Below the pieces are notes generated by a model. It saw only the letters and a program-made list of their open reading frames with translations. It made no database searches and was not told the origin of the DNA. From Mobula hypostoma (lineage: Eukaryota): a stretch of DNA of 64,000 nucleotides. A program made the translations under genes and the position numbers. The stretch covers positions 34,100,001 through 34,164,000 of the forward strand of contig NC_086119.1 in assembly GCF_963921235.1 (NCBI RefSeq), given 5' to 3'. How positions within the stretch are numbered: position 1 is the first letter of the stretch; each line of letters opens with the position of its first letter. Positions 3,391 to 29,389 of this stretch are shown here, in pieces.

Positions 3391-3540
3391 GCAAAATAAC
3401 AAGGATTTTGATTTTATTTTTTCAAAAGTGAGCATTGGTAGGCTCACAACAGGAATTCTGCAGATGCTGGAAATTCAAGCAACACGCATCAAAGTTGCTG
3501 GTGAACGCAGCAGGCCAGGCAGCATCTATAGGAAGAGGCG

Positions 3541-3578
3541 CAGTCGACGTTTCAGGCCGAGACCCTTCGTCAGGACTA
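3541..3578 (-). ncRNA. Minimal type I hammerhead ribozyme (PLE-type), core intact
   Basis: Reverse complement reads tagtc CTGACGA a gggt ctcg gcct GAAAC GTC gactg: conserved core, stems I and II, palindromic ACGT in place of stem III, GUC triplet. Confidence 0.8.
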
Positions 3579-3606
3579 ACTGAAGGAAGAGAGCTCTTCC
3601 TTCAGT

Positions 3607-3644
3607 TAGTCCTGAGGAAGGGTCTCGGCCTGAAACGTCGACTG
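3607..3644 (+). ncRNA. Minimal type I hammerhead ribozyme (PLE-type), core intact
   Basis: tagtc CTGAGGA a gggt ctcg gcct GAAAC GTC gactg. Confidence 0.8.
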
Positions 3645-6365
3645 CGCCTCTTCCTATAGATGCTGCCTGGCCTGCTGCGTTCACCAGCAACTTTGATTGG
3701 TAGGCTCACTATTATTTTCACTGCAAAATCCAGGTAATTGTATGAAATACTGATGTTAAAAAAATTATTCTTCATTGTGAAGTACTGCCTTTGCTAATTG
3801 ACTGCAGTAAAAAATGCCTTTAAATCTCACTTTAATTGACATTCAATGTTTAACTGGTATTGTTGAGAGATACCGTAATATAAAACAAATGTAGCTTTCC
3901 ATTTCTCTCCAGCTCAACATGTCTTTGTTTAGCTAATATTCTGTGCACTTTCAGTTGGTTGACTTCAAACAGTTCAATCCACTCAGGGAAAAAAAAATCT
4001 AATGGGAATTCTTCATCTATAGCTGAAAACATATTTAGCTTTTGACAGAAGTCTCACCACAATTTGTGAGTCATTAAGTATGTTAATGATGATACTGCCA
4101 TTTTGTTATGGTGCATGGTTAACAACTAACTGCTACTAGTTCTTCAAAACTCGAGAAACAAGGTTCAGACTCTGAAAAATGTTGTTGCCTTCAACAAGCG
4201 TACATTTCCTCTGTCTCCCTCATTGCATTGTGAACTTTTTCCCCCACCCTGAACAAATCTGTCATCAGTTAGGGCTGTTTTATTGAACTTGGCTTCTCCA
4301 AATGAGCCCAATTGTCTCAGTTGAAATGGATTCAGAGTGCTTGGCCCTGGCCATCAATTGCAATCCTTCAAATTTCAGCATGAATGCTTGATGCAGTATC
4401 CTTCCTTTAACTCGTGGTAAAGGTGGGACTGCAATTCCTGTCTTTCCCCTCACTGTGCGAGGACCTCATTTAGGGGTACCTGAGGAACGACAGCTGTGTG
4501 TATAGGAACTGAAAGAGTGCTGTTGATTAAATCATCATCAAGTCAAGACTGCAAAAAGTCAATTCTGCTTCCCGTCTTCAATGATCTCCTTTTATCTTAA
4601 AGTAATGAGGTATGGCACTTTTGCATCAAGCTGTATGCCGGCTTCCATTAACATACTCCATCTGCTTCACAAGCCAGGGGGAAGTCATTTCTGTGAGCTT
4701 GCATGGAGGCAATCAAAGCAATTTGGCACAAAGGGAAGAGAACAGCCCATTTCTAATGGATCACAACACCATTGAAGAGATTTATCTGTTTAAAATATAC
4801 AGTTTGTTTTGAAGAATAAAAATGCACTTTCCATGAAATTGCATGAATAAAACACTTCAATTTATGCTATTCAATATAAAACCATTTGGGGAGATATGTT
4901 GCTGTTTGTTGTGTCTATGCATACATTGACTACTGACAAAGTAAATTGTAGTATCAAAGAAACACATCACTCTACAAGTTTTCACCAAAATTAAATTCAG
5001 CACAAATTAATTCAGCTGCTATAGCATTTACAATTCGCACCTTGTGACGACTTGTGCAGACTCTAAGGCGCTTCCTGTAAGCCAGGCCTCGCATCACGCA
5101 ATTGGAGAAGCATGATTGATTAAGATGCCTTCTGGAACACCGTCTCTAAATCCCTCTGCCTTCTGATCTTCCTCCTTCTGGGAAATTTGGATTCTGAACT
5201 GAGAGAGAAGTTGGAAAATTTGTGGAAACCCCAACTGTAAAATTTTAAGACTAAAATGATCATGCTGGCCTTCCCTGTACTTCCTGCTCCCTGACCTCCA
5301 TTCAGAGTCTTGGGGAGAGACTGAGAAAGACGTGTTGTTATACTGTTCATCAAAGAATCTTTGAAACGGTAATAATTGGTTAATACCACTCTCTCGAAAG
5401 TAACTTGCTTCACAAACCTCATTCATAACACCATTCAGAAAATAAAAATGTTTAACAGATTTAATTAATATTTCCAGATCAAAAATTCAACTGCAACAAA
5501 AAAATACAGAAGATATTGATCTAAACACCAACACTAAGAGAGTCAGGAGAATAATATAGAGAATATGATAAGTCTATACAAGTTGGTTAAAAAGACATTA
5601 CCTTCTTTAATGTAGCTCCTGTAACTAGCACTCAGGCCCCAGACATGAAACCTTTTGAAATATTTTCCACAATTCATTTTATTATCTTTGCATAATTTAT
5701 GAGCTACTGGAGATCATTCATCTCTTCTAAGCACTGGCATATTAAGCTGTTGAGGGGACAGAATTGTAAATTCAGTGGCACATTCCTGATGAGCTGGCCG
5801 CAGGTCAGCAAAGCATTACTATGCCAGAAATTGAGCTGATGTCTCAGAGTCTACTGAGTCTCCAGAACAGCAGAGAGTTTTGTCAGGAGCCGTCCATGTG
5901 ATGATGGTGGCCAGATCGCAGTCTGTCAATCTTCTGTTGGCTGCAAGGAAAGCATATGTCTAGTTTACAGCTTGCTTACGTGATGGCCAATAATAGAACT
6001 TGCTTATTGGCTGGTTTCTTTTTCAGGAAATGAGGCTGTTTCTTGCAGGAACCGAGGCAATCAATTGGTCCTTTGGCCTGATGTCTCTGTACAGAATACG
6101 CAAAAGAAAAATGTGCATTTTCCATACATTTGAGAAACAGAACTATGTAAAACAAGCATTTTAAATTGTTCAGCATTTTGTAACTTTTCTTGTTCAATGA
6201 TTGAAATTAACCATTCCCTACATGTCATATATTGAACTGTTTTGCTGTCAAGAGCCAGATTATTCTTAAATCATGCAGAAATTTTAAAACCATATATAAT
6301 GACATCTTATGTTTCACCATGCTTTTAAAATGGGAATAACTATTAGAATTATACTTTCAACAAGT

Positions 6366-6856
6366 CCTTATATTCCGTCTGGGTAGCCTCCAACCTGATG
6401 GCATGAACATTGACTTCTCAAACTTCCACTAATGACCCACCTCCCCCTCGTACCCCATCTGTTACTTATTTTTATACACACATTCTTTCTCTCACTCTCC
6501 TTTTTCTCCCTCTGTCCCTCTGACTATACCCTTTGCCCACCCTCTGGGCTTACCCCCCTCCTTTTCTTTTTCCCTAGGCCTCCTGTTCCATGATCCTCTC
6601 ATATCCCTTTTGCCAAGCACCTGTCCAGCTCTTGGCTCCATCCCTCCCCCTCCTGTCTTCTCCTATCATTTCGGATTTCCCCCTCCCCCTCCCACTTTCA
6701 AATCTCTTACTATCTCTTCTTTCAGTTAGTCCTGACGAAGGGTCTCGGCCCAAAACGTCGACTGTACCTCTTCCTAGAGATGCTGCCTGGCCTGCTGCGT
6801 CACCAGCGACTTTTATGTGTGTTACTTGAAATCCCAGCATCTGCAGATTTCCTCGT
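6366..6856 (+). mobile_element. Penelope-like 3' fragment (ORF end, 3' UTR, mutated hammerhead, tail)
   Basis: Encodes LIFRLGSLQPDGMNIDFSNFH*. Hammerhead 6727-6764 has GAAA>AAAA. Ends with the tail cagcatctgcagatttcctcgt. Confidence 0.9.
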
Positions 6857-7862: not shown

Positions 7863-8661
7863 GCAAGTGAGAAAGGGCCAACATGTTGTACAATCTAAAC
7901 ACTATTTTCGATGATTTGCGTCCTCTTTTCAGCAACATATCTGAAAAATGATTCTTGCACTTTTAATTGGAACTTCAAGTTGCAATGATTTAAAATGCTT
8001 TCTATAAATGTAGATCACTTAGTATCGTACAAATTTCTTGTATCATTCTTGTTTACTTCCCTTTATATGACAAAGAAGCATCAAAATTACCTTTCAGCCA
8101 CCATGTCTATGCTGACCCGAGATGCCAATCTAAGTTAGTTCTATCCATTAAGTAGTATCTCATAATTTCCAAAACTGTATTGATCCTTTTGCAACTGCTA
8201 CTCCTTAACTGCCACTTTAGTGTTCTTGGTACACATTGGTATTGAAGCAATATTTTTTGTTTATTTATTGAAACAAATCCATCACAGTGCCCTTCATGAA
8301 AGAATTATGAAAGCAAAGAAACATTGGTGCCAAGTCATACATGGAGATGTTTGCATAGATGCCTACAGGCTAAGTAAAAGAAACATACACAAAACATGCT
8401 GGTGGAATGCAGCAGGCCAGGCAGCATCTATAGGAAGAGGTACAGTCGACGTTTCGGACTGGGACCCTTTGTCAGGACTAACTGAAAGAAGTTTTGAAAG
8501 TAGGGGGGGCAGATCTGAAATGATAGAAGACAAGAGGGGGAGGGATGAAGCTGGAAAGTTGATTGGCAAAAGGGATACAGACTGGAGAAGGGGGATGATC
8601 ATGGGATGGGAAGCCAGGGGAGAGAGAGAAGGGGGGAGGGGAGCCCAGAGGGTGGAGAGCA

Positions 8662-8794
8662 NNNNNNNNNNNNNNNNNNNNNNNNNNNNNNNNNNNNNNN
8701 NNNNNNNNNNNNNNNNNNNNNNNNNNNNNNNNNNNNNNNNNNNNNNNNNNNNNNNNNNNNNNNNNNNNNNNNNNNNNNNNNNNNNNNNNNNNNN
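8662..8794. other. Assembly gap (133 N)
   Basis: Run of N inside the purine-rich PLE UTR. Confidence 0.99.
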
Positions 8795-8808
8795 GGGGAG
8801 GAGGGGCA

Positions 8809-10560
8809 TTGGTAGAAGTTAGAGAAGTCGATGTTCATGCCATCAGGTTGGAGGCTACCCAGACAGAACATAAGTTGTTATTCCTCCAACCTGAGTGTGG
8901 CTTCATCTTGACAGCAGAGGAAGCCGTGGATAGACATATCAGAATGGGAATGGGACGTGGAATTAAAATGTGTGGCCACTGGGAGATCTTGCTTTCTCTG
9001 GTGGACAGAGCATAGGTGTTCAGCGAAATGGTCTCCCAGCCTGCGTCGGGTCTCACCGATATATAGAAGGCTGTACCGGGAGCACCAGACACAGTATAGC
9101 ACCCCAGCCGACACACAGGTGAAGTGTCGCCTCACCTGGAAGGACTGTCTGGGGCCCTGAATGGTGGTGAGAGAGGAAGTGTAAGGGCATGTGTAACACT
9201 TGTTCCACTTACACGGATAAGTGCCAGGAGGGAGATCGGTGGGAAGGGATGGTGGGGACGAATGGACAAGGGAGTCACGTAGGGAGCGATCGCTGCAGAA
9301 AGCAGAAGGAGGTGGGGAGGGAAAGATGTGCTTGGTGATGGGATCCCGTTGGAGGTGGTGGAAGTTACGGAGAATAATATGTTGGACCCGGAGGCTGGTG
9401 GGGTGGTAGGTGAGGACAAGGGGAACCCTATTCCTAGTGGCGTGGCGGGAGGATGGAGTGAGAGCAGATGTGCGTGAAATGGGGGAGATGCGTTTGAGAG
9501 CAGAGTTGATGGTGGAGGAAGGGAAGCCTCTTTCTTTAAAAAAGGAGCACATCTCCTTCGTCCTGGAATGAAAAGCCTCATCCTGAGAGCAGATGTGGCG
9601 GAGATGGAGGAATTGCGAGAAGGGGATGGCATTTTTGCAGGAGACAGGGTGGGAAGAGGAATAGTCCAGGTAGCTGTGAGAGTCCGTAGGCTTATACTAG
9701 ACATCAGTAGATAAACTGTCTCCAGAGATAGAGACAGAAAGATCAAAAAAGGGGAGGGAGATACTGGAAATGGACCAGGTAAACTTGAAGGCAGGGTGAA
9801 AGTTGGAGGCAAAGTTAACGAAGCCAACGAGTTCAGCATGCGTGCAGGAAGCAGCGCCAATGCAGTCGTCGATGTAGTGAAGGAAAAGTGGGGGACAGAT
9901 ACCAGTATAGGCTTGGAACATGCATTGTTCCACAAAGCCAATGAAAAGGCAGGCATAGCTGGGACCCATATGGGTGCCCATGGCTACACCTTTAGTTTGG
10001 AGGAAGTGGGAGGAGCCAAAGGAGAAATTATTAAGAGTAAGGACTAATTCCGCTAGACAGAGGAGAGTGGTGGTAGAGGGGAACTGGTTAGATCTGGAAT
10101 CCAAAAAGTAGCGGAGAGCTTTGAGACCTTCCTGGTGGGGGATGGAGGTATATAGGGACTGAACATCCATGGTGAAAATAAAGCGGTGGGGGCCAGGGAA
10201 CTTAAAATCATTGAAAAGATTCAGAGCATGAGAAGTGTCACGAACATAGGTGGGAAGGGATTGAACAAGGGGGGATAAAACAGTGTCAAGGTATGCAGAA
10301 ACGAGTTCGGTGGGGCAGGAGCAAGCTGAGACAATAGGTCTGCCAGGACAGGCAGGTTTGTGGATCTTGGGTAGGAGGCAGAAACAGGAAGTATGGGGTG
10401 TGGGAACTATAAGGTTGGTAGTAGTGGATGGGAGATCCTTTGAGCTGATAAAGTTGGTGATGGTGTGGGAGACAATGGCCTGGTGCTCCTTAGTGGGGTC
10501 ATGATCGAGGGGTGAATAAGAGGAGGTATCCGCGAGTTGACGCTGTGCCTCGGCAAGGTA
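8809..10560 (-). pseudogene. Disrupted PLE ORF: reverse transcriptase, Cys linker, GIY-YIG endonuclease
   Basis: RT motifs MDVQSLYTSIP, QTKGVAMGTHMGPSYACLF and YIDD. Linker CKWNKCYTC. Endonuclease GVLYCVWCSRYSLLYIGETRRRLGDHFAEH. Broken by in-frame stops. Confidence 0.92.
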
Positions 10561-13500
10561 GAGGTCAAGCTTGCACTTAAAAGGAGAAGGAGGGGTAAAG
10601 AGGTGGAATGACTGTGGGAGGAAATTCCCAAATTTATGACCTTAGTGACTGAATAAGTGCCCATCAGGACCAGAACTATGGGAGTACAAGAATACAGTAT
10701 TGAGAATATCAGCTATCTTGGAAGGTTACAGAGTGTACTGGGGGTTAAAGAGCCAGAGAGAGGCAAGAATGTGGAGAGACATGAAGGCACAGCTAAAAAG
10801 TTTAAAAATCTATTTGGTACTTAACAGGTCGCTGGTGTAAACTAGCAACCCGTTCCATCCAGATGATTATTCTATGCTGAAAATAACAAAGGCCTATAAA
10901 TGATTCCTATTATATTTAATACATTCATTATTCTAAATGCAAAATATATGAAATAAAATGAGATTTATCAACAGGAAAAGGTAGTCACTGCTTTTGATAC
11001 ACCATGTGAAATCTCTGTGCAGTATAGGGGCTTGAATTCTCAAGTTTCAATGCATAAAAAGCTTTAAAAACATGACTGAACACCTAACTAGAAACACATT
11101 GTCCTTTTTTTTTCATTAATTGTGTAAATCTCAGCCACACTGATTTTAAATGTTTATGCAATTTACTTGAATACTTTGAATTTTGAACTTTTTGAACTTT
11201 GAGTGTTGGGTGTGCTTTTAAAATGTTCATCACAATTCCAGACCAATACTGTACTACTTTTTCATGGATGTTTTGGTCAGTGGTGAAAAAATAGCAAAAT
11301 AAAAAAATATGGACATAATGAAACAAAAAAAATTGTCACGTACTTGCAATTACATAAAGTAAATGTTATGTTGTCAAATAAATAATGAAGGTAGTTTGTA
11401 GTTGTTGTTAAGGCTTACTGCAATTTATTGATGCTTTGTAGGGACAGAAAGCTGATGTTTTCTTGAGCTTTTTTTTGCAAACTGAATATACCAGATTTTA
11501 TTGAACCTGCATAAAATAATAAAGAAGCATCAGAAATAAATCCTGTAAGCTTCAAGCCTTCAGCGTTGTTAAGCAGAATTGCTGATCTTACTGATTTAGA
11601 TAAATCTTGCAGAATTATATTTGTTCTCAAGAAAAAGACTTCAAAGGTTTAACCACCCCTTTGCTAGCTCAGGATCTCTTGCCACATATAGTTTGGGTTC
11701 CACATTATTGACCTACATTAAATATCAAACAATGACACAGGCTATGGTTAAGATTTTTCCGAGCAGTTTTGTCCTGTGATTTACTTGCCTGTTTAAAAAA
11801 ATCATTGTGGCAGAATTATTGTTTACCCATGCATGAGATGTTAGGACAGCTGATGATTTATAGGTTTGCTTGCCTATAAAATCGGGTTTGCTCTTTAATT
11901 TTCTTCATTAGAAGGGGAGGACCAGTGTATGGTCCATTAAGCCCTTCTTGCATTTTTCTGCTCAGTGGATGGAAGGTAATGGATGGTATGAACATCATAG
12001 TTATTGACACTTGGAATATCATATGTCATCATATATTGCGTCAATCCAGAGGGAATAATATGAATCTTGATTACATTTCCATGTGCTCTCCTTGTATATG
12101 TACCCTCTGTTATGAGGGATGATCTATAATATATCTTGTGCTGTGTATATCTCCATTAACTCAATAAACAACTTAATTAAAAAGTCAATTGGATTTACCT
12201 GATAAATATGCTACTATTCTTCCCGGTGCACAGACCTTCCTGCTTCTGGGGATAAATCCTGAACTTACTTCGATAATTGACATCTGTAATCATTACTTGA
12301 AAATATTGATATGTTACAACAGCTTACCATTCTAACTCAAACCGCGGTGAATAATCTGAATTATCTCTTTCTAGGGATAACTAACTTTACAAACAATTAA
12401 ATTTGTGTCAGAAGTGTGCAAATGTATCAAGTGAATCTTTGAAAGCAATGATTCTATTTGCAGTCAAATAGCCATAATTAATGTCCTGCAGAATTCCATA
12501 TTCTGCATTCAAAACAAGAAAGTATCAATAGTTGGCATTTCCCCTACTTTATTAAACGGTTACAATATTTCTTTCAGAACAAAGTTTTTAATCTTTATTT
12601 TTCACTTTACACCATATAACTTTAGTCAATGAGAATTTTCAGTATTATTCTCAGATAAATTCGGAGTTCCATTATCAAAATTTTGAATAATATAAGCAGT
12701 TCTTCACATACACTTTTGTGAATTTAATTTCACAGATAACTTCTCCTTCCTCTTTTATGAAACTGCATACAGTATTTCAACTTTTTGTACCATTGCTCTA
12801 ATGTCTTCTTCCTGTGTAATAAAATTTTGTTTACTAATGTTCCTGAGAAATGCCTTGGGGTGTATTGCTCCATGAAAATCACTATTTAAAGGGAAGGACA
12901 TGTTGTTTGGTGTGGTGTTAATTAATGATAATTATAATCAGATATGATTAGTCTCCACAGCCAAGATATGTTTGCCTCATTTTGTAGATCAGAATCAGTT
13001 AGAATTCTACCTATTTGACCAAGTACAGTACAGGCAAATAATTTATTTTAGGGTGGATGTAAATTTTTTTTTATTTTCTGAGGAAAAAAATGAAAAGTAT
13101 AGTTACTCCATTAAAAAGTCTATTGTCTCTTTTGGATTAGGGGAATATTTAAATATTCACCTCCATCTCTTTTCCTTTTTCTATTCCTCCCTTTTGCACC
13201 CAATTCTACCTCTTTGAATATGGGCAAGAATACTTGCACTTTGGGCATTGAACAGAATCCTATTTGGGTGACTCAGTTGGAAGGGAGTTTCTCAGTTTAA
13301 TCACAAAAACTAGAGCAGTTCTCATTAACATAAGATGTCATTGGCAGTTGGTTTGCTTTTCAAACAAAGCAATCTAATCTCAGGTAATTTAAAAAATTCA
13401 GCTGATATGTAACACTTATTGCTTTTGCTCTGTGCTTATGATTGCTCTGAAAATCTCTCTGCTGAGTTCTTTATTATTTTGCTTTATTCAATTATATAAT

Positions 13501-13920
13501 GTGTGCTTGAATGTACATCTTCCACTTTAATATGTTTTATGAAAGGAAAATGCACAGTGCTCATCAATTTCACACCTAAAATCACCCAACTGAGGATAGG
13601 GGAAAATGCCTGATGAAGTTCTGGTCCATCTTGCCCAATAATGTTGCTGAAAGTTATTAGTTTGTGGCAGCTCTAGGATATGCTTCACTGGCACTTTGGG
13701 AATGGGTTAGTTTTAATCACTATTCTGATTAGCGTTCATTAATATTGGTGCATTTGCAACCAACCCAAGTTTGTTTGTTTCCTCCGTCAAATTCCAGTAC
13801 ACTCTCGCTGGAGGTGAGAGGAAGGAAAACATAGCCAGGTTGATTCACTAATTCTTCTAAAAAAAAATCCTACCTTTCACCAGTTTTCCTAATACATATT
13901 TTGTCTCTGCTTTGTTTCAG

Positions 13921-13950: not shown

Positions 13951-14641
13951 GTAAGATTACATTTACCCGGAATCAAACAGCATTTACAATTATGCAGATA
14001 TTTTCTTTAGTTTGAGAAGTTATAAATGGAATCTATTCATATGGAAGTTCGATATATATTAAAACAAGTCGTGATTATTTTTTCTGTGAGTTTTGAGAAA
14101 ATTGTTAATTATTTGACAAAGAATCAACAGATCATCTGCACAATCTTGGCTTCTTGCGCAAATTTATAGAAAGAAAATGTAGCGTATGGAATTGATTGGT
14201 TGTTGTCTGGCATCTTCAATAAAGTGGTAGTTGTGCTGTTTGTCATTGACTGTGGATCTTTGATGGGAATGTGGCAACATTTCTGGATCATATCATTCAA
14301 TACACATGATTTGCTTGTGATGTTATTCTGCTGGGTTCAGCTTATTGTACCTAGGCCAGTATAAGTGAAGTATTAGAGAAATAAAAGAAATATCACGTTT
14401 TGAAAATAAATCAATCAATGAGCTATGGGATTTCAGCCTGGGGTAGTACTTCACAAAGTAATCGCAATTAATACTTGAAACCAAGCAAGTTGAAAATTGA
14501 TTATACTTATCACGTTACTCACAATCAATTTGAATTGGAAATGCTTTGGGATTGTAAGATTCTGTTCATTTAATAGTGATAATTGCATCTTCTACAGCTC
14601 TCTGTGTGAGTTTGGGGACTATTGTATATGCTGATTTGATG

Positions 14642-15213
14642 CCTCCTCTACTGTACACACATTTTAATTCCACATCCCATTCCCATTCTGACATGTCTAT
14701 CCACAGCCTCCTCTACTGTAAAGATGAAGCCACACTCAGGTTGGAGGAACAACACCTTATATTCCGTCTGGGTAGCCTCCAACCTGATGGCATGAACATC
14801 GACTTCTCTAACTTCCGCTAATGCCCCACCTCCCCCTCGTACCCCATCCGTTATTTATTTTTATGCACACATTCTTTCTCTTTCTCTCCTTTTTCTCCCT
14901 CTGTCCCTCTGAATATACCTCTTGCCCATCCTCTGGGTCCCCCCCACCTTCCTTGTCTTTCTTCCCGGACCTCCTGTCCCATGATCCTCTCGTATCCCTT
15001 TTGCCTATCACCTGTTCAGCTCTCGGCTCTATCCCTCCCCCTCCTGTCTTCTCCTATCATTTTGGATCTCCCCCTCCCCCTCCAACTTTCAAATCCCTTA
15101 CTCATTCTTCCTTCAGTTAGTCCTGACGAAGGGTCTCGGCCTGAAACGTCGACTGCACCTCTTCCTACAGATGCTGCCTGGCCTGCTGCGTTCACCAGCA
15201 ACTTTGATGTGTG
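14642..15213 (+). mobile_element. Penelope-like 3' fragment with 14-bp TSD
   Basis: Encodes HFNSTSHSHSDMSIH...GMNIDFSNFR*. Flanked by atgctgatttgatg at 14628-14641 and 15214-15227. Confidence 0.93.
15118..15155 (+). ncRNA. Minimal type I hammerhead ribozyme, core intact
   Basis: tagtc CTGACGA a gggt ctcg gcct GAAAC GTC gactg. Confidence 0.8.
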
Positions 15214-16547
15214 ATGCTGATTTGATGTCATTTCTGTTGTGAAAGGCCACAGGCCGAGATACATTGAGATTACCTCGCCTTGTCTTCTTCATTAGTGGCT
15301 CTGGGAAAAGCAGCGATGACCAGCATGAAGTTTGCTTGATGAGAATATCCAATTAAATGAATTCTTTCCACCCTACTGTCACACTGTGGATTTTCAGATG
15401 AAATCCACTTGACTTTTCTCAGCCTATTGTTCTCTGTCTTAATACATACAGTTAATCTTGATTTTGGATATAACCAAGTTGTAATATTATAGGTGTCTGT
15501 CTAGCATTTTAATAATTAATCACTTTACTCAATAGCCTATGCTTAAAGACCTGGATCTGAATTGGACTTCTTTCTACCAGTTTGGAGGCAAGCTTGAATC
15601 CCCAGCGCTTGAGAAAACTTGTTTGCATCTAATTACAAGAGATGTTCTCTGAAATAAGAACTCAGCAATGAGAGCTTACAGATGTCCCCTGAATGCTTCA
15701 ATTAATCATAGTGAGTAAGAACTAGATTAGTCTGCAGGATGACAATCCAAAGCAGAGTTTGAGGTGCATAAGAAACATGAAAGGTGCACCCTAAATTGTT
15801 AATTCAGTTTTCATATGACACAGCATTATCAGAAGCCTGAAAAATATGAATTAGATATTTTCCAAGGTTCGTGTAACCTGGGAATTAATGAGTCCCATAA
15901 GTACCAGGTCAGGGTCTCGCTGGTAAAATTCTGATCTGAAGATAAAGCTAATTGCCTCAAGCACTGAAGCATTAATTTTAAGCTTTACCTTATTGTAGAA
16001 TCATTCCCCCTTTCTGAGAATGAATTATGTATAATACCATTTTATGCCTTAGAACTGTCACACGGTAACAGGTGACTAAAATTAATATTTGATCCCTCCC
16101 CCAATGGCTCAATTAGTAGGAGCTGCTATGTGTGAAGCCAAGCTATATGCATCACGAACTCTTGGGTTTGTTTCATCATTAGTGCCAAGTTAGCCATTCC
16201 TTGTGGGCCTGGCTATAGAGGAGCTACAGGCAAACCCAAGCCCTAGAGATGGGAGAAAAGAATAATCATTTGCATCCCCATTTCTAATTATCTGCTGGTT
16301 ATTTCTGCTGCAAAGTGAGGAATCTTATCCTGAATCTTCCTGCCTATTGTCTAGCATTGTCATCCTTGTTTTCGCAAGGCCCTAATGTAGAAAGCCATCT
16401 CAAATTCCCAGAGCATATTTGAATGATGGTTGGACCCAGCATCAATGGACTTAGCCAGCCCCAACCCTTAAATGCCTTTGGAAGCTTTAGCAGGTGGCAA
16501 AGTCACTCCAATGTTGCAGACTATAAAAGCTGTGAGAGCATTGAATA

Positions 16548-21275: not shown

Positions 21276-21713
21276 GGAATAATTATGAGATTTAAGACAA
21301 CTGCGCCACTCCACAGAGCACTATAAGAGGTCATTCTGGCCCTCGGCCTTCAGGCTGTATAATGAGTCAACCTATAGCCAGGGAAATGATGACCTCCTCC
21401 TGTGAGACTGTTTGAGGTAACTTATTTTTTATTCTTTCTTTCTTCTCTTCTAATATTTGTATATCTGTGCACTTGTAATGCTAATGTGACACTGTAATTT
21501 CCTTTGGGATCAATAAAATATCTACCTTTCTTCTGGTCTAAGTGAAAGACTGTGAATTTTTTGACCGTGAAGACCAATGGAGGAAGAAGGAAGATGGCAT
21601 CAAAGGGATGCCTACTGAGAGATGATGGCATTAAAGGGATGCCCACTGACGGGTGTGGTGGTAATGAAATGATGACACAAGAGCGACTGTGGATGCTGCA
21701 AATATGGGTAAAC

Positions 21714-21890
21714 ATATGCAAAATGCTGGAGGAACTCAGCAAGTCAGGCAGCATCTGTAGTGGAAAATGAACAGTCAATGATTCAGGCCAAGAGAGGTCT
21801 GAAGGGACTTGGCCTGAAACATTGACTATTCATTATCCTCCATAGATACTGCCTGTCTTGCTGACTCCATCCAGCATTTTGTGTGTGTTG
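21714..21890. mobile_element. Old fold-back mini-Penelope (decayed)
   Basis: caaaatgctggaggaactcagcaagtcaggcagcatct ... agatactgcctgtcttgctgactccatccagcattttg form diverged inverted arms, centred on a decayed hammerhead. Confidence 0.75.
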
Positions 21891-23159
21891 GTGGTATAAT
21901 GGTGGTGAGATGGCATTGGAATATGAGCGGGGCTCTGGGGGTGTTGGTAATGGAACAACGGTGTTGTTACGGAAAGGTGAATTTCCAGTGGGAAGAGAAC
22001 AATGAAGAGTTGATATTGCTGTAAACAGCAATGTTGTTGTGGTGGCATTGGAGGTGTTATGAAGCCTTGGTTGGGGGTAGATGGTCATGGAACTAAGGTG
22101 TTAGCAGTGGAACAATTTTTGTTGTATTAGTGAAGGGTGAAGATTCTGGTCGTTACTCTGTCTAATTTTAAATAGTGTTGGTGCTCGGGTAGTACAGGGC
22201 AACATTGCATCTGAAGATTTCCCCTGCTACTCTTTGATTCCATTCATCAATCTCAATCCTCATTCTTTGCACACAGTCATAGAAGCCTCGAAATTAAAGG
22301 AAGATTCAGCCCATTTTTCCTGTGGTAGCACTCACTCTTCCTCTGGAGCAATCCATTTTAACCCTCTTTCCATACGCTCTCCCAGTTAATCTCTTTTCAA
22401 ATATAAATATCTAATTCCTCCTGAAATGTTACTGTGACCACATCAGGTAAAATATTTATCAGGAATATATGAAAACAATATATGTGAAAACTGGGCTTCT
22501 TCCTGCTAAAAACCATTTCTCCTTGCAGCAAATTCATTGGATGATAGAAGCAATCTATCATCATTTATGTTCTCAGAATATTTGAAAGTTTTGAAAACCA
22601 CGTGTAGATTACCCCTGGACCTTCTCTTTTCCAACAACCTATGCAAGACCACGGCAGTGGATGTGGAGACCATGGTAGTCACTGCTGAATGATATCATGT
22701 TGGTCAGTATCATGATTGGTTCCTATTCACATTGGATGCTTCTTCTTAGGCTTATCGCCACATGACATAGAGGGTAGGTTCGAAGTCATACCTTCATTAA
22801 AGTAGGACAGCAAGGAAACAGAGTTACTGAGTTTACAATTGCAAAGATCTTCTACATCTGCTACTGCATGGTTTTGGTTGCAGATGGTGGCTATAACACT
22901 AAAATTATACAAAGAAGATCCCTGCTGTCACGATGCAGAGTGTTAGTAGGACCCACTGTGAAGGGCCTTTATGCAATTGAGGTGAGTAAGTTAGCCAAGT
23001 TATCCTTTTGTACTGGGCTTATAAATGACTAAGGCCAATAAAAAACTAAAAATATTGGAAAAGCTCAGCTGGTCACGCAATCTTTGCAGAAAATGAAACA
23101 GCTACTGTTTCAAGTTGAAGACTCTTCATCAGAACTGTCCGATGACATATTGACTGTTT

Positions 23160-23740
23160 CAGACATCCCACCTCTCCCGGAAGTCCCGGGGGTCTCCCGC
23201 AGATTAATAATGGCTCCCTGATGCCCGCAAATTATATACAATATCATGGAAATCAATTTTTTTGAGAGCGAGCGAGCGAAAGAGAGAAAGCGCGAGAGCA
23301 AGAGCAAGCAAGCGAGAGCGCACAAGCGAGAGAGAAAGCAAGTGAGAGAGCAAGAGCGACCACGAGAGAGAGAGTGCACCCGCCTGCCATGGCAGTGTTT
23401 CAAAAAAAGAAAATATAAAACGTATGTCACCCCAAACTACACTAAAGTGTACCCCTGCCTAATAGGGGTCAAAAATAATGACAGTGTTGCTCGCTGCACT
23501 GTTTGCAACAGTGACTTTTCTATTGCCCATGGTGGGTTAAGACTGTAAAAGACATGTTGAGGTGAGTTTAACAGGTGTCATTCGTTCATTAGCATAGCTA
23601 ACGTTATTTAAAACTAGCTGGCTCGCTGCTAAAGAGCTACTCTATTGCAGACATCCCACCTCCCCCGGAAGTTCCGGGAGTCTCCTGCAAATTGATGGTG
23701 CTACCTCCCTGAAATGAGTTTTTGCGGGGTGGGATGTCTG
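23160..23740 (+). mobile_element. Non-autonomous hAT-like DNA transposon with 6-bp TSD, nested in an old fold-back PLE remnant (~23050-23826)
   Basis: TIRs cagacatcccacc / ggtgggatgtctg. TSD ctgttt at 23154-23159 and 23741-23746. BED-finger remnant CTVCNSDFSIAHGG. Confidence 0.8.
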
Positions 23741-24027
23741 CTGTTTGTCTTTTCACAGAAGCTGTCTGGCCAGTTGAGTTTACCCAGCACTTCTAGATTT
23801 TATTTCAGATTTCCACCCTCTGCAGTTTTTTTTTAGTCTTCAAAGCCTAGGGCTCCTCGACCACTGTGGTTTTCTAGGTATCTTTCTCTGGATCTCTACT
23901 GAGATGTGTATTGGACTCCTAATATCAGTCAAAAAAAAATCACCAGAGAGGATGCAAATTAAAAGGTTTTTTGGACAAATTGAGTGTTGACAGAAAGAAA
24001 ACTTTTTGAAAACAATCAATATAACAA

Positions 24028-24478
24028 TCCACCTCCCCTTTGTACCCCATCCGTTATTTATTTATTTTATTATTATTACTAATTTTTTTTCTGTCGCCTT
24101 TTTCTCCCTCTGTCCCTCTCACTATACTCCTTGCCCATCCTCTGGGCTTCCCTCCTCCCCCTTTCTTTCTCCCCAGGCCTCCCGTCCTATGATCCTCTCC
24201 CTTCTCCAGCCTCATATCCCTTTTGCCAATCAACTTTCCAGCTCTTAGCTCCATCCCTCCCCCTCCTGTTTTCTCCTATCTTTTCCGATATCCCCCCCTC
24301 CCCCTCCCACTTTCAAATCTCTTACTATCTCTTCTTTCAGTTAGTCCTGATGAAGGGTCTCGGCCCGAAACGTCGACGGTACTTCTTCCTAGAGATGCTG
24401 CCTGGCCTGCTGCGTTCACCAACATTTTCTGTGTGTGTTGCTTGAAATTCCAGCATCTGCAGATTTCCTCGTGTTTGC
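24028..24478 (+). mobile_element. Penelope-like 3' UTR with tail
   Basis: Near-identical to the 6430-6856 UTR. Confidence 0.9.
24342..24379 (+). ncRNA. Minimal hammerhead ribozyme, core intact, stem I weakened
   Basis: tagtc CTGATGA a gggt ctcg gccc GAAAC GTC gacgg. Confidence 0.72.
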
Positions 24479-24556
24479 ATATAACTTTGACCAAGTTCTG
24501 CAGCCAAAGAACACAGCTTTGTCTGACTCCATGTGAAGCTCGGTGGGATATATCTT

Positions 24557-25212
24557 AAACACAAAATAATCTGCAGATGCTGTGATCAAAGCAACACTTT
24601 CAGTACGCTGGATGAACTCAGCAGGTCGGGCAGCATCAGTTAGAAACGATGAGTCGACGTTTCGGGCCAGAACCCTTCGTCAGGACTGAAGAATGAAAGA
24701 TGGGGAAGGATTTGAGGAATGCTTGTAGCTTCAGTTGAAAGACCAGTTATTTGAAAGACAAAGGGGTGGGGGAGGGGAAGCATTGACGTCATAGCTCTGA
24801 AAACAATGGATAGTAGAAGAAGGAGGCGGAACCATGAGGGAGCTGGGGGAGGGGTAGAGTGAAATAGGGAGGGGGAGGGAATTACCGGAAGGTGGAGAAT
24901 TCTATGTTCATACCAAGGGGGGAGAATTCTATGTTCATATCAATTCTAGTTCATACCCATTCCCATTCAGATATGTCAATACATGGCCTCCTCTACTGCC
25001 ATGATGAGGCTAAACTCAGGTTGGAGGAGCAACACCTCATATACCGTCTAGGTAGTCTCCAGCCCCTTGGTATGAACATAGAATTCTCCAACTTCCGGTA
25101 ATTCCCTCCCCCTCCCTTCCTCTATCCCTATTTCGGGCCGGAACCCCGAAACATCGACTCACTGTTTCCACGGATGCTGCCCGACCTGCTGAGTTCCTCC
25201 AGTGTGTTGGGA
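24557..25212. mobile_element. Inverted (head-to-head) Penelope-like insertion, second subfamily
   Basis: Minus-oriented 3' end at 24557-~24918. Plus-oriented piece from ~24955 encodes HSHSDMSIHGLLYCHDEAKLRLEEQHLIYRLGSLQPLGMNIEFSNFR*. Confidence 0.85.
24652..24688 (-). ncRNA. Minimal hammerhead ribozyme, core intact
   Basis: Reverse complement reads cagtc CTGACGA a gggt tctg gccc GAAAC GTC gact. Confidence 0.75.
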
Positions 25213-26070
25213 GTGTTTCCATGGTCAATCATACTGCCAAGATGGAACAAGGTATGATTAGTGCTTATCCCAACCAGGTGATGTACATGGGGCTGGCAAC
25301 AGTATTGAAAGGCAAATCTGTATTGAAAGGTAAAATCCTTCAGAATGGGTGGAACCTGACATCCTAGTACATTTTTAAAAGGCTTGTGGTTTATTTCAAA
25401 TGAAATGATAAGTGTCAGGGAAAATAAGTTAATCCGTGATAAGAGTCTCTGGGTTGTGAACGCAGTTATAAATTAAAGCAGAAAGCATTTTCCTAGTGCT
25501 GTTCATGTTGCATTAGATTTACTGAGGTCCTCAAATGAAGAAGCAGATTGGCCCCAGAAAGTCAGAGGAGAAGCTGCCAACACAAGTATGGTTTGCCAGG
25601 GGTATTGCTGCCCACTAGGATGATTTGTGAGAAACTTCCTACATTCGTAATTGCACAGCAAAGGAACTGACTTCCTGCCTCCCAATTTTTGCAGTTAGCC
25701 TTGACACTGCTGGAGGAGCGATTGACCAGCCTACTGGTTCTGTTCTTATCTGATGTGCATATGTGAGGATGTTCACACAAGCACACGCATTCCGGTAATA
25801 GACTGATCTAATTGCTTTGATTGGGAAACTCAGGCTATTTTTCTTTTTGGTTCCCATAATTGCTTCCAAACTGAGTTATCTGATGTGGATTGTGAATCAA
25901 CCCCAGTTTCCCTGTGATATTCATATCTTAGGAATTTTCTGTACAAACTATTTGTAGAATCACTGAAAAAACATTGCCTGAACAGTCTACTCTCAGATTA
26001 CCATCTGCCCTTTCAACATTTCTCAGTAAATGATAATTGCCCCTTGCAAAACAAATCAAAGAGATAAGAA

Positions 26071-26296
26071 AACAACAGGAATTCTGCAGATGCTGGAAAT
26101 TCAAGCAACACACATCCAAGTTGCTGGTGAACACAGCAGGCCAGGCAGCACCTGTAGGAAGAGGTGCAGTCGGCGTTTCAGGCCGAGACCCTTCGTCAGG
26201 ACTAACTGAAGGGTCTCGGCCTGAAACGTCGACTGCACCTCTTCCTACAGATGCTGCCTGGCCTGCTGCGTTCACCAGCAACTTTGATGTGTGTTG
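26071..26296. mobile_element. Fold-back mini-Penelope element with 14-bp TSD
   Basis: Inverted arms join at ctaactGAAGGgtctcgg. Flanked by caaagagataagaa at 26057-26070 and 26297-26310. Confidence 0.92.
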
Positions 26297-26386
26297 CAAA
26301 GAGATAAGAATGTGGAGTGGTTGGTGCATGTAAGATATGTGGGTGTGAAATTAAGAGAATTTAGGAGTGAGATGAGGTGAAGTTTA

Positions 26387-26915
26387 AGCAACACACACAA
26401 AATGCTGGAGGAATTCAGCAGGCCAGACAGCATCTATAGGAAAGAGTAAACAGTCGACGTTTCAGGCCGAGAGCCATCATTAGGACTGAAGAAAAAAGAT
26501 GAAAAGTCAGTGTAAGAAGGTGGGTGGAAGGGAGGAAGAAGTAGAAGGCAGATAGGTGAAGCTGGGAGGGGGAAGGGTGAAGTAAACAGCTGTAAAGTCA
26601 ATTGGTGAAAGAGATACAGGGTTGGAGAAGGAGGAATCTGGTAGGAGAGGACAGAAGGCTATGGAAGAAAGGAAGGGCAAGGAGCATCAGAGGGATATAA
26701 TGGGCAGGTAAGAGATAAGGCGAGAGAGAGAGAAGTTGGAATGGGGAATGGTGAAGGAATAAGGGGTTTATTATTTGGGAATAACAACTTTATCGGTCCA
26801 GATAAGGGGGCTTGACCCAAAATGTCAACTGTCCACCTCCCTCCACAGATGTCACCTTATACACTGGGTTCATCCAGCATTTTCTGTATTTTGAAGATTG
26901 CACTATCTGCAGTCG
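26387..26915. mobile_element. Older inverted PLE 3' ends
   Basis: Minus-oriented UTR at 26387-~26765 (hammerhead core CTAATGA, mutated). Decayed plus-oriented tail at ~26795-26915. Confidence 0.75.
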
Positions 26916-29064
26916 CATGTCTCAGCATTCAGATTCCAGTCCACAAGTAAGTATAATCTGGCAATAGGCCCTGTATTTCTGATTAAGTATTGTGCAGGTA
27001 CATCGAAGAAGTAAGTGTACCACTGGATATGACTTAGTTACAGTGCTGAGCAATTCAAAATGGCTGCCTTCCCAGGGCTCTGTTGTTACCCACTGTCTAT
27101 AAATGATAACTTTTGTAGCAAGACTCAAGAAACCCACTAAGGAACTTGATTTAAACAATTCAGAGTTAAGATGCAGTTCGTTGGGTTTCTGAAGGTCTGG
27201 GAGTAAATGATCCGAAGTATTAAGGAAAGTGATGATTAAGCTGGTTAAGCCGAACTGCAACCACTTTAGCTCGGAAAAGTGTCCAACAAAAATACATTTT
27301 GGCAAAAGCTTGGATGTCAGCCTCAAAAATAATTGCCTTTAATAAATTGCCCAGATTTACTGCTGTCATGTGTGTTCTCAACATTTAGCAATGGGATTTA
27401 ATGGGATGGAGCTTTACTGTTGCACAAAGATTTCTAAATTAAACTTGACAATCACAGGAATTGACTGTGCTGCTGCGTCTAAGGGATGCAGATTTAATGG
27501 TCCATTATCGAAGTGCTGTTCATATTTAAAGTGTAAAGGGACTCCAAGGCCCATAAACGCAGTCAAATGCAGAATTTTAGACTGTCAACAGGACCATATA
27601 TTGTATGGATCTACCACAGGGGACACACAGGCAATCTTTATGATGGGAACATTTTGTACTTCAAGGCACATTTTTTGTAACTTCAGGAGCCTGAACAGCT
27701 GTGCACCATAAATAAAGATGAATAATTAGAATTAATAATCAGTTACACATTTTGTGTTGGTTGTAGGGGTGGTTAGGGGCTTGGGCTAGTGTTAACCAGA
27801 TTGTTTATTCAGCTGTCATTTGAGGCTGTAAGCTGCAAATATATGTGACATCAAGTACTTTGCAAATCCCAAATGATTCCTACTTTATCTTCGGAGAGTA
27901 ATGGGAATTTCAAATGCATGAAAATATACACCAAGATTGGCACTGAGCATATATCTGACCCAATTCATTATTCTCATCTGACCTTGTAAATCTAATGCAC
28001 TCGGGCAATGGACCAGAGCAAAATCCCAGCAAGTCCTGTCAAAATAATTTCCAGAATGTTCTCCAAAATTCTACTTGTGAAATAATAACCTCCACCATTG
28101 AAGATGTTACTTTTACATTGTTAGAATGAATCTCTCCCTAGATAATACCAGGCACCTACAGGTGACCTTAGGCTCTGAAGAGACGTGTCATCCAGGGTTT
28201 TGGCTTCCAAGTGCTGACTGTTTATTTCCATTTACACAGATGTGCAGACAGTGCTTGTTTTGCACTCAGTTCTGTTGTTGTCTGGTGATCAATCCAAAAC
28301 CACCGTTCACTATTTTCCATGAGGACTGAATGGTCACTTGAGTAAATCATGGGAAGTTTGTTATTCTCAGAAGAAGTACATCACTAGATTTCCTGAGCTA
28401 GAAAGGAAGAAGTGGCGCTCATTCGCAGAGTATACATACTCATCACCCTGTTTCATACAACAAGATTAGGCTGTCAAAAACCTGACCATAAGTCCTGGAA
28501 AACAGATAGATCATTTTCATAAGTCATAACTCTGCTTCAGTGGCTCTCTACTGTACAAAGCAATGGGCAGACTAACCCCATTCTCAGTGGACTACCGGAT
28601 ATGGTGCTACTGATGTTGTGCAACAGCTTACTTGCAGATCAGAAGGCAAGAAATATTACTAAAAACATGCCTATGGTCTTTTTTTAAAATTGGGTTCTTC
28701 GGCTTTCTTGCTTTGTGGTGCAAACAAACCTCAAGATGTATTATATATACGTTCTTTGATTTTAAAAAAATGTATTTTGATTGATTGATAATTCATGCTT
28801 CTTTCTTGGGAGGTCAGTGACTATCTCAGACCCTGCAATTACTTCTCACTACAGACACTTAAGAACTCATGTATACTTAGAAAAAATGAGGTTAAAAGTA
28901 TGAAAAATTCAGTCAGCACAAGATTGAGGGAATTTTGCAGTGTCATCCATAACAGCACTGCGGGAAGAGTTCAGAATCAGCCACTATTTTTCTCAGCAAC
29001 AGCAGAAAAATTAGATGTTGGAGTAAAGCGGAATTATCTCCTACCACAACGCAGTGACTTAACG

Positions 29065-29279
29065 CAAACAACAGGAATTCTGCAGATGCTGGAAATTCAA
29101 GCAACACACATCAAAGTTGCTGGTGAACGCAGCAGGGCAAGCAGCATCTATAGGAAGAGGCGCAGTCGACGTTTCAGGCTGAGACCCTTCGTCAGGGTCT
29201 CGGCCTGAAACGTCGACTGCGCCTCTTCCTATAGATGCTGCTTGCCCTGCTGCGTTCACCAGCAACTTTGATGTGTGTT
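29065..29279. mobile_element. Fold-back mini-Penelope element with 14-bp TSD
   Basis: Arms join at cttcgtcAGGgtctcgg. Flanked by gcagtgacttaacg at 29051-29064 and 29280-29293. Confidence 0.92.
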
Positions 29280-29389
29280 GCAGTGACTTAACGACTACCT
29301 TTTCCTAAAAAAATAAACTTGCTATTTCCAAAGCAATGGATATTAACCAGACAAGTTTCGCAGTTGGTGGGTGTGCATAGATGGACAGA

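What the first reader, a model, noticed from the sequence alone, without database searches (positions are those of the whole stretch)
3434..29293. Young palindromic, non-coding mini-Penelope elements with ribozyme-centred arms and exact 14-bp TSDs
Seen: three independent insertions (3448-3695, 26071-26296, 29065-29279) made only of two inverted copies of the PLE 3' end. Each has a different but exactly 14-bp flanking direct repeat, and each folds back at or within ~15 nt of the hammerhead. Older decayed versions (21714, ~23050, 45444) show the design recurs across subfamilies. The 3448 copy encodes an intact hammerhead on both strands. Established: PLEs often insert with inverted ends. Inference: either a stereotyped minimal integration product or a self-propagating hairpin-RNA family using PLE RT, reminiscent of retrozymes. 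The differing centres favour repeated de novo formation. Best candidate for an undescribed system in this window.
Basis: partly seen in the sequence, partly recalled or inferred. Interest (0 to 1): 0.85.

Follow-up and report, generated by a model that had tools for sequence, protein, structure and literature searches.

The report
Minimal palindromic Penelope insertion products
Three ~220-bp DNA palindromes are real, young, single-event insertions of the 3' end of a Penelope-like retrotransposon, built in the head-to-head, one-tailed style already described for this transposon class. They are not a new kind of mobile element.

Summary
Three palindromes (3448-3695, 26071-26296, 29065-29279) have 88-104-nt arms that are 96-99% complementary. 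Each is flanked by a different, exact 14-bp duplication. The arms are the 3' UTR end of a genuine Penelope-like element (PLE), which has RT and GIY-YIG ORFs at 8878-10170 on the minus strand.

Contigs from two related species run straight across the copy-3 site. One keeps a single 14-mer; the other has 14 letters there. One species also lacks copy 2. Each palindrome is therefore one recent insertion, not an assembly fold-back.

In all nine inverted PLE insertions in the window, one arm carries a 31-40-nt "tail" and the other ends at a second, tail-less site. That site is also used by simple insertions. The arms of one palindrome share private variants, and two centres show 3-5 nt of microhomology.

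This matches the published PLE hallmarks: a head-to-head inverted 5'-truncated copy, a one-sided tail and a TSD. It also matches the 2024 in vitro finding that a PLE protein cuts and extends both strands from two adjacent start sites.

I found no evidence of self-propagation or retrozyme-like behaviour. First readers noted similar PLE palindromes (0.86-3 kb) on other pieces of this genome. The one open point is that most junctions cluster at the 5' border of the hammerhead.

The parts
3434..3447 (.). Copy 1 left target-site duplication (ATTGGTAGGCTCAC)
   Evidence: Exact 14-nt direct repeat with 3696-3709
3448..3487 (-). Copy 1 'tail': extra 40 nt of the PLE 3' end, present on the left arm only
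   Evidence: Left arm starts at query position 1, right arm stops at position 41
3488..3591 (-). Copy 1 left arm (PLE sense on the minus strand). Complete hammerhead motif at 3541-3578
3594..3695 (+). Copy 1 right, tail-less arm (PLE sense on the plus strand). Hammerhead motif at 3607-3644 with CUGAGGA box
3696..3709 (.). Copy 1 right target-site duplication
26057..26070 (.). Copy 2 left target-site duplication (CAAAGAGATAAGAA)
   Evidence: The organism C contig ends its match at 26070 and resumes at 26325 with only 24 letters between
26071..26207 (-). Copy 2 tail (26071-26104), left arm (26105-26194) and 13-nt continuation of that arm (26195-26207)
   Evidence: An organism A contig crosses the flank/arm border (25186-26092)
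26208..26296 (+). Copy 2 right, tail-less arm. Starts inside the hammerhead (+5 from C3). 5-nt overlap GAAGG with the left arm
26297..26310 (.). Copy 2 right target-site duplication
29051..29064 (.). Copy 3 left target-site duplication (GCAGTGACTTAACG)
29065..29193 (-). Copy 3 tail (29065-29100), left arm (29101-29188) and 5-nt continuation
   Evidence: Organism A contig 28689-29087 crosses the border
29194..29279 (+). Copy 3 right, tail-less arm. 3-nt overlap with the left arm at the centre
   Evidence: An organism A contig starts at 29259 and runs into the right flank
29280..29293 (.). Copy 3 right target-site duplication. The only copy of the 14-mer in organism B
   Evidence: Organism B contig: record 1-363 = 28688-29050, record 364-1664 = 29280-30583
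14628..15227 (+). Young simple (non-palindromic) 5'-truncated insertion of the same subfamily (14642-15213). Tail-less 3' end, exact 14-bp TSD ATGCTGATTTGATG
8378..10700 (-). Longer decayed PLE copy that identifies the family. RT ORF 9697-10170, GIY-YIG ORF 8878-9552, 3' UTR with hammerhead 8439-8486, tail-less 3' end at 8378. Contains the N gap 8662-8794. The 5' limit (~10700) is approximate
21676..21892 (.). Older mini-palindrome. Tail on the left arm, arms 83% complementary, centre at the hammerhead
45410..45617 (.). Older mini-palindrome. Tail on the left arm, arms 83% complementary
23045..23826 (.). Old mini-palindrome folded at the CUGAUGA box (~23138). Tail on the right arm. The sense arm is split by a later 581-bp TIR element (23160-23740)
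64..292 (.). Old three-segment insertion: tail-bearing antisense arm, a 68-nt re-copied segment, then a 38-nt tail-less sense piece. Decayed ~14-15-nt TSD at 49-63 / 295-309
24560..25217 (.). Older, longer inverted insertion. Tail arm ~24560-24920, tail-less arm 24921-25217, which reaches 142 nt further 5' and has a ~175-nt internal deletion. The junction is not at the hammerhead
   Evidence: Present in organism B, absent in C

Best explanation
Each palindrome is the complete product of one abortive integration by a Penelope-like retrotransposon. It is not an element in its own right.

Proposed sequence of events (the cut geometry is read from the sequence; the remaining steps are inferred):
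1. The PLE protein cuts the two target strands 14 bp apart.
2. Both freed 3' ends prime reverse transcription on PLE RNA.
3. One cDNA starts at the true 3' end and so carries the 31-40-nt 'tail'. The other starts at the second initiation site, about 31-40 nt upstream, and is tail-less.
4. Both cDNAs copy the same template only as far as the 5' border of the hammerhead region.
5. Their 3' ends pair through 0-5 nt of microhomology, and each is completed using the other as template.
6. Gap filling then yields a head-to-head palindrome flanked by a 14-bp duplication.

Confidence. 'Single-event, de novo PLE insertion product of the known head-to-head type' is about 0.8. The specific twin-priming route is about 0.55.
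For: Family identity.
- The arms equal the last 90-147 nt of a real PLE, with RT followed by GIY-YIG.

Single recent events.
- An organism B contig joins 29050 directly to 29280 and keeps one 14-mer.
- Organism C has 14 letters in place of 244 at copy 3, and 24 in place of 254 at copy 2.
- Organism A contigs cross the flank/arm borders.

Fixed stagger.
- Four of four young insertions have TSDs of exactly 14 bp, including the simple insertion 14642-15213.

Two start sites.
- All nine inverted insertions in the window pair one tailed arm with one tail-less arm.
- If the two ends were chosen independently, this would happen with probability at most 0.5^9.
- The tail-less end is also the end of the simple insertions.
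- In organism B, 129 contigs stop matching at 26297 and continue into AT-rich flanks.

One template per event.
- The arms share private variants. Copy 2 has cacc..tacag, which the simple copy 14642-15213 also carries. Copy 3 has gcttgccc.

Junctions and template state.
- Overlaps at the centres are 5 nt (copy 2) and 3 nt (copy 3).
- All arms extend 21-45 nt upstream of the predicted ribozyme cut, so uncleaved RNA was copied.

Literature.
- Inverted 5'-truncated copy plus one-sided 30-40-bp tail: PMC8557442 and PMC3846280.
- The PAc protein cleaves and extends both strands, the two RT start sites bracket the tail, and hammerhead cleavage is not needed: PMC11167929.
Against: - In six to seven of the nine inverted insertions, the two arms end within 0-18 nt of each other. 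Two independent cDNAs would not do this unless both stop at a common obstacle. A single cDNA copying back on itself explains it more simply.
- The centre of each palindrome was not confirmed by reads. The short-read contigs break inside the high-copy arms.
- Copy 1 was not tested for an empty site. Copy 2 is undecided in organism B.
- The published in vitro study saw no strand preference for either start site, so the strict one-tail pairing has no in vitro counterpart.
- The window holds only nine inverted events.
Confidence: 0.8

Rival explanations
1. Self-priming (snap-back). A single target-primed cDNA starting at the tailed site stops near the hammerhead. It folds back on a few complementary bases, copies itself, and is joined to the other target end. 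Only one RNA-templated cDNA is made.
For: - Arms are nearly equal in length, and the spacers are short (2, 13 and 5 nt).
- In copies 2 and 3 the spacer continues the tailed arm.
- The 3' end of that arm can pair with bases 5-13 nt behind it (GAAGG/CCTTC, AGG/CCT).
- Arkhipova et al. 2013 inferred self-priming from palindromes at inverted PLE junctions.
Against: - It does not explain why copy-back synthesis stops at the position that simple insertions use as an RT start site.
- In 24560-25217 the tail-less arm holds 142 nt that the tailed arm lacks. A copied-back arm cannot contain these.
- In vitro, both target strands are extended.
Confidence: 0.25
2. The palindromes are a self-propagating, non-autonomous hairpin-RNA family, retrozyme-like or SINE-like. 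They would be transcribed and re-inserted as units by the PLE RT.
For: - A minus-strand transcript would end with both RT start sites.
- Three of the four young insertions in the window are mini-palindromes.
- A contig of organism D spans a copy-3-like centre (29169-29241) at 92% identity.
- One inverted junction (26202 joined to 24384) has about 30 times the unique depth in organism A. I followed up neither of these leads.
Against: - The three young copies have three different centres.
- Copy 2 shares its private variants with a 572-bp ordinary insertion that reaches into the EN coding region. The source RNA was therefore an ordinary PLE transcript.
- The full transcript folds into a near-perfect duplex of about 100 bp, -224 kcal/mol. 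That hides the ribozyme and would hinder an RT.
- The two hammerheads of copy 1 lie on opposite strands, so no transcript has two sense ribozymes to excise a unit.
Confidence: 0.06
3. The palindromes are assembly fold-back artefacts, or each is two independent neighbouring insertions in opposite orientation.
For: - No read was shown to span a centre.
- PLE structures are known to trouble assemblies.
Against: - Exact 14-bp duplications bracket each whole palindrome, with no internal TSD.
- Related species have clean empty sites that remove the entire palindrome plus one 14-mer.
- Independent short-read contigs of organism A confirm the outer borders.
- The arms share private variants.
Confidence: 0.02

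Closest known systems
Head-to-head inverted pLTR insertions of Penelope-like elements with a one-sided 30-40-bp tail (Arkhipova et al. 2013, PMC3846280; Craig et al. 2021, PMC8557442)
   Same: - An inverted 5'-truncated copy abuts the direct copy.
- The tail is on one end only (31-40 nt here, 31 bp in Adineta vaga).
- A short TSD surrounds the whole unit.
- There is a palindrome or microhomology at the inverted junction, and a hammerhead motif in the repeated part.
   Different: - Here nothing lies between the inverted copies. There is no ORF, and each arm is only 88-147 nt, so the whole insert is one 215-248-bp palindrome.
- The TSD is a constant 14 bp (8-10 bp in the rotifer examples).
- The host is probably a ray.
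In vitro integration by the Anolis Poseidon PLE protein PAc (Frangieh et al. 2024, PMC11167929)
   Same: - Both target strands are cleaved and extended.
- Two adjacent internal RT start sites are separated by the tail.
- The hammerhead lies about 90-100 nt upstream of the start sites.
- Uncleaved RNA is the template, and targets are AT-rich.
   Different: - The in vitro work did not follow the joining of the two cDNAs.
- It reported no coupling between strand and start site.
- The genomic copies here always pair one tailed end with one tail-less end.
L1 twin priming (inversion/truncation insertions of LINE-1)
   Same: - Both nicked target strands prime cDNA synthesis.
- The two cDNAs are joined through microhomology.
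- The result is flanked by a TSD.
   Different: - In L1 the second primer anneals far upstream. The two inverted segments are therefore different, adjacent parts of the RNA.
- Here both arms are the same part, giving a true palindrome.
Animal non-LTR retrozymes (Cervera and de la Pena 2020, PMC7229834; Li et al. 2026 preprint, 10.64898/2026.07.22.740005)
   Same: - They are short and non-coding.
- They derive from the PLE pLTR.
- They carry type-I minimal hammerhead motifs.
   Different: - Retrozymes are direct tandem repeats whose sense ribozymes excise a monomer that circularises.
- These are inverted repeats with at most one sense ribozyme per transcript.
- I have no evidence of circular RNA.
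MITEs / foldback DNA transposons
   Same: - They are small and non-coding.
- They have long inverted arms.
- They have a fixed-length TSD.
   Different: - The outer ends here are not identical, because one arm has an extra 31-40 nt.
- Those ends coincide with RT start sites of a retroelement.
- The arms are retroelement 3' UTR, and the centres differ from copy to copy.

Membership tests
Endonuclease-positive Penelope-like element (source of the arms) | Single ORF with RT followed by a C-terminal GIY-YIG endonuclease | tested here: met
   On the minus strand, ORF 9697-10170 hits RVT_1 (E 2.6e-4). The downstream ORF 8878-9552 carries the ..LYIGET..R..EH.. motif and hits GIY-YIG weakly (E 0.045). 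Its 70-81% identical ray homologues hit at E 0.001-0.002 over profile positions 2-72 of 78. All hits are below Pfam's gathering score, and the ORFs are decayed and frameshifted.
Endonuclease-positive Penelope-like element (source of the arms) | Minimal type-I hammerhead motif in the repeated 3'/pLTR region: CUGANGA, an unpaired nt before helix II, GAAA, palindromic 15.2-16.2, no loop 3 | tested here: met
   The motif is UAGUC-CUGAYGA-A-GGGU(loop)GCCY-GAAA-CG-UC/GACUG. Across 17 diverged copies, 85.6% of cells pair, against 19-42% when the partners are slid. Helix II pairs in 94% of cells, and 5 cells are compensatory. Rfam models do not detect it, as expected for a motif without helix III. Catalysis was not tested. 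The young master has a G10.1-U11.1 wobble.
PLE head-to-head insertion architecture | Inverted 5'-truncated copy adjacent to the direct copy, the whole unit bounded by one TSD | tested here: met
   Empty sites in related species remove the whole unit.
PLE head-to-head insertion architecture | 30-40-bp tail present at only one end | tested here: met
   The tail is 40, 34 and 36 nt on the left arm only in the three young copies. It is one-sided in all nine inverted insertions in the window.
Animal non-LTR retrozyme | Direct tandem repeats, each with a sense hammerhead, so that a monomer can be excised | tested here: not met
   The arms are inverted, not tandem. Only copy 1 has two complete motifs, and they lie on opposite strands.
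Animal non-LTR retrozyme | Accumulation of small circular RNA | not testable with these tools
   Only assembled contigs were available. The one possible RNA run (X9) cannot be told from DNA.
Self-propagating palindromic family | Same centre and shared private variants at many loci | tested here: not met
   Within the window, the three young copies have three different centres. A genome-wide test was not possible.
MITE / foldback DNA transposon | Identical terminal inverted repeats at both outer ends | tested here: not met
   One arm extends 31-40 nt beyond the other, and the ends match retroelement RT start sites.

The most novel reading that the evidence does not exclude
The clustering of junctions at the 5' border of the hammerhead may be programmed rather than incidental. 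In seven of the nine inverted insertions, at least one arm ends within about 20 nt of the CUGANGA box.

One possibility is that the telomerase-related PLE RT stays anchored on the hammerhead-containing RNA fold. That fold would then act like a template-boundary element and force template switching. On this reading, mini-palindromes are a regular output.

Such palindromes encode ~100-bp perfect hairpin RNAs. These could feed small-RNA silencing of the family, or occasionally be re-mobilised.
Probability: 0.08. Interest if true: 0.7.

Novelty: new member of a known kind. Interest (0 to 1): 0.3.

Why it matters
How PLEs generate their odd tandem and inverted structures is still an open mechanistic question. 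The first in vitro system dates from 2024 and stops before the two ends are joined.

These minimal, young palindromes have clean empty sites in sister species, so they are natural end-products that can be read directly. They show four things:
- a fixed 14-bp stagger;
- one tailed and one tail-less start per event;
- a single template per event;
- microhomology at the join.

That is useful supporting material for PLE specialists, and a caution for repeat annotators, because these objects look like MITEs or miRNA hairpins. It is not a new class of element.

Tried and rejected
- Rfam. A scan of the whole window at gathering threshold gave nothing. A scan of 3400-3750 at E<=10 gave only microRNA-precursor models that match any long hairpin, and no hammerhead model. 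I treat those microRNA hits as shape artefacts.
- Run-off at the ribozyme cut. I considered that the fold-back marks run-off at the hammerhead cleavage site. I rejected this because every arm continues 21-45 nt upstream of the predicted cut.
- Strand bias. The tailed arm looked as if it always faced left (7 of 7). The old copy at 23045-23826 has it on the right, so the count is 7 of 8 scored (the arm at 26379-26912 was left out), which is not significant.
- TSDs of older copies. None were found with an exact-match search for 6359-6856, 24029-24472, 24560-25217, 21676-21892 or 45410-45617. They are presumably decayed.
- Scan notes. A search for notes near this window returned nothing. A search for second-stage work on twin priming also returned nothing.
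- Limits of the read data.
  - No palindrome centre was confirmed by reads.
  - Copy 2 in organism B remains undecided: the contig ends at 26056 with 48 unplaced letters.
  - A genome-wide census of junctions was not possible with the tools.
- Literature. A search for ORF-less PLE palindromes found no dedicated description.
Full report
**The observation**

The three stretches read as described. The repeat finder confirms the inverted arms and the flanking duplications:

| Copy | Arms | Length | Complementarity | Spacer | TSD positions |
|---|---|---|---|---|---|
| 1 | 3488-3591 / 3594-3697 | 104 nt | 99% | 2 nt | 3434-3447 / 3696-3709 |
| 2 | 26105-26194 / 26208-26297 | 90 nt | 96% | 13 nt | 26057-26070 / 26297-26310 |
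| 3 | 29101-29188 / 29194-29281 | 88 nt | 99% | 5 nt | 29051-29064 / 29280-29293 |

Each TSD is a different, exact 14-mer. In every copy the left arm runs 34-40 nt further out than the right arm, so the palindromes are asymmetric at their outer ends.

**The assembly gap**

The N run at 8662-8794 is 4.9 kb from the nearest palindrome. It lies in the 3' UTR of a longer PLE copy on the minus strand.
- Its left side (8378-8655) aligns with 6537-6827 and 14926-15212.
- Its right side (8795-8974) aligns with 6367-6446 and 14656-14835.
- Both alignments are collinear and on the same strand. Those two copies have 90 nt where the window has 133 N.

The two sides therefore belong to one element in one orientation, and no reading frame is involved. 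The EN ORF stops at 8878.

**What the arms are**

The arm sequence recurs about 29 times in the window. One copy (8378 to about 10700, minus strand) continues upstream into two ORFs.
- ORF 9697-10170 matches reverse transcriptase.
- ORF 8878-9552 has a cysteine-rich motif followed by ..LYIGET..R..EH.. and a weak GIY-YIG match.

The closest database proteins are uncharacterised proteins of the stingray Hypanus sabinus (up to 81% identity) and of Mobula. Some of these hit GIY-YIG over nearly the whole profile. RT followed by GIY-YIG defines an endonuclease-positive Penelope-like element. The window probably comes from a ray; this is an inference.

The region about 100 nt from the 3' end carries a minimal type-I hammerhead motif of the kind described for metazoan PLEs (PMC4209133).
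- It has CUGAYGA, one unpaired A, a 4-bp helix II, GAAA and the palindromic CG.
- It then has UC followed by the predicted cut.
- Over 17 diverged copies the proposed pairs form in 85.6% of cells, against 19-42% for slid controls, with a few compensatory changes.
- Rfam does not see it.
- The young subfamily has U at 11.1 (a G-U wobble). Copy 2's only complete motif has C at 16.1. Copy 3 has no complete motif. 'Intact hammerhead' therefore holds only for the boxes of copy 1.

**Single, recent events**

Contigs of four public runs were laid on 23400-29399, and contigs of three runs on 25400-31399.
- Organism A (95% of the sampled words, probably the source species) has contigs crossing the outer borders: 25186-26092, 28689-29087, and 29259 onward.
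- Organism B is about 2% diverged in unique DNA. One 1706-nt contig matches 28688-29050 with its letters 1-363, and 29280-30583 with letters 364-1664. The site is empty and holds one 14-mer.
- Organism C has 14 letters where the window has 244 at copy 3, and 24 letters where the window has 254 at copy 2.

This excludes an assembly fold-back and two separate insertions. It dates copy 3 after the A-B split and copy 2 after the split from organism C. The older copies at 24029-24472 and 24560-25217 are present in B but absent in C.

**Anatomy that bears on mechanism**

1. TSD length. A fourth young insertion of the same subfamily, 14642-15213, is a plain 5'-truncated copy. Its TSD is also exactly 14 bp. 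The 14-bp stagger is therefore a property of the family's endonuclease, not of the palindromes.
2. Outer ends.
   - One arm starts at the true 3' end, with a spread of a few nt.
   - The other starts at a GU-rich site 31-40 nt upstream.
   - That second site is the end of most simple insertions in the window.
   - It is also where 129 organism B contigs stop matching and continue into AT-rich flanks.
   - All nine inverted insertions in the window pair one tailed arm with one tail-less arm. Chance gives at most 0.5^9.
3. Template. The arms of one palindrome share private variants. Copy 2's variants are also those of the simple insertion 14642-15213, which reaches the EN coding region. The template was ordinary PLE RNA, one source per event.
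4. Inner ends. They lie at -17/-17, -13/+5 and -1/+7 from the first C of the CUGANGA box. Overlaps are 5 and 3 nt in copies 2 and 3. Every arm runs 21-45 nt upstream of the predicted ribozyme cut.
5. Not all inverted insertions fold at the hammerhead. In 24560-25217 the junction is about 350 nt in. Its tail-less arm also reaches 142 nt further than the tailed arm. The pair 26379-26912 is of similar size.

**Comparison with what is known**

Arkhipova and colleagues describe PLE insertions in which an inverted 5'-truncated pLTR abuts the direct copy. They report a 31-bp tail on one of the inverted pLTRs, a short TSD around the whole unit, and palindromes at the inverted junction (PMC3846280; PMC8557442).

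Frangieh et al. 2024 showed that a purified PLE protein cleaves and extends both target strands. It initiates at two adjacent internal sites whose spacing is the tail, and it does not need ribozyme cleavage (PMC11167929).

The three palindromes are the shortest possible version of that architecture. I favour twin priming from the two start sites of one RNA, followed by microhomology joining. It explains the outer ends and the longer tail-less arm at 24560-25217. A single cDNA copying back on itself explains the near-equal arms better and remains a serious rival.

**Self-propagation**

Self-propagation is not supported.
- The three centres differ.
- The source lineage also makes ordinary insertions.
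- A transcript of the whole element folds into a -224 kcal/mol duplex.

Two loose leads prevent full exclusion.
- An organism D contig spans a copy-3-like centre at 92% identity.
- One inverted junction sits at about 30 times unique depth in organism A.

**Notes from other windows**

First-stage notes on other pieces of the same genome describe PLE palindromes of 0.86, 1, 1.5, 2.2 and 3 kb. They report 14-15-bp TSDs and a one-sided 36-nt tail, and one note describes 'a size series down to non-coding palindromes'. I did not check these notes. They fit the view that the mini-palindromes are the short end of a continuum, and they weaken the idea that the design is centred on the ribozyme.

Within this window, however, seven of nine inverted insertions have an arm ending within about 20 nt of the CUGANGA box. 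That leaves a possible stall or template-switch hot spot to be tested genome-wide.

**Verdict**

The interpretation as a new system is not supported. These are new, unusually clean examples of a known PLE insertion mode. They have modest value for the still unsettled mechanism of PLE integration.

Noticed in passing
window 23160-23740: A 581-bp element with perfect 13-bp terminal inverted repeats (CAGACATCCCACC) and an apparent 6-bp duplication (CTGTTT). It is inserted into the sense arm of an old PLE palindrome. It contains a GA-rich microsatellite (23264-23370) and two 55-nt direct repeats. It is probably a non-autonomous DNA transposon.
   Followed up: partly
window 116-251: Two tandem 68-nt units (87% identical) inside an old PLE insertion. 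The unit covers helix II to the middle of the arm but not the CUGANGA box. It looks like a template re-slip during one insertion. Contigs of organism C show a similar go-back joint (24417 to 24353).
   Followed up: partly
window 29169-29241 (contig of run X11, organism D): A 79-nt contig from a more distant species matches across the centre of copy 3 at 92% identity. The orthologous site is empty in organisms B and C. This means either recurrent formation of the same junction or a related palindrome elsewhere in that genome.
   Followed up: no
window 26202 joined to 24384 (run X1, table 5c): A contig joins an antisense arm at about 134 nt from the 3' end to a sense arm at about 89 nt, with one letter between. 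Its depth is about 361, against about 12 for unique DNA. This may be a multi-copy inverted junction.
   Followed up: no
window 3632, 15143, 26231, 29215 and mirrored arms: All arms of the young subfamily read ggccTgaaac, where the 24336 copy has ggccCgaaac. The active master's hammerhead therefore carries a G10.1-U11.1 wobble at a CpG site. Whether it still cleaves is unknown.
   Followed up: partly
window 57876-59231 minus strand: Two ORFs with RVT_1 matches. One also carries the ALKBH8_N-type Pfam domain. Together they are an unrelated retroelement fragment with a reverse transcriptase, probably a non-LTR (LINE) element.
   Followed up: no
window 26297 (run X5, table 7): 129 contigs of organism B stop matching exactly at the tail-less end. 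They continue into unrelated AT-rich sequence. This is consistent with genome-wide use of that start site and with AT-rich targets.
   Followed up: partly
window 24020-25217: Organism C has only about 150 letters where the window has 1198. Two PLE insertions (24029-24472 and 24560-25217) are therefore shared by organisms A and B but absent from C. This gives a relative age series for the family.
   Followed up: partly
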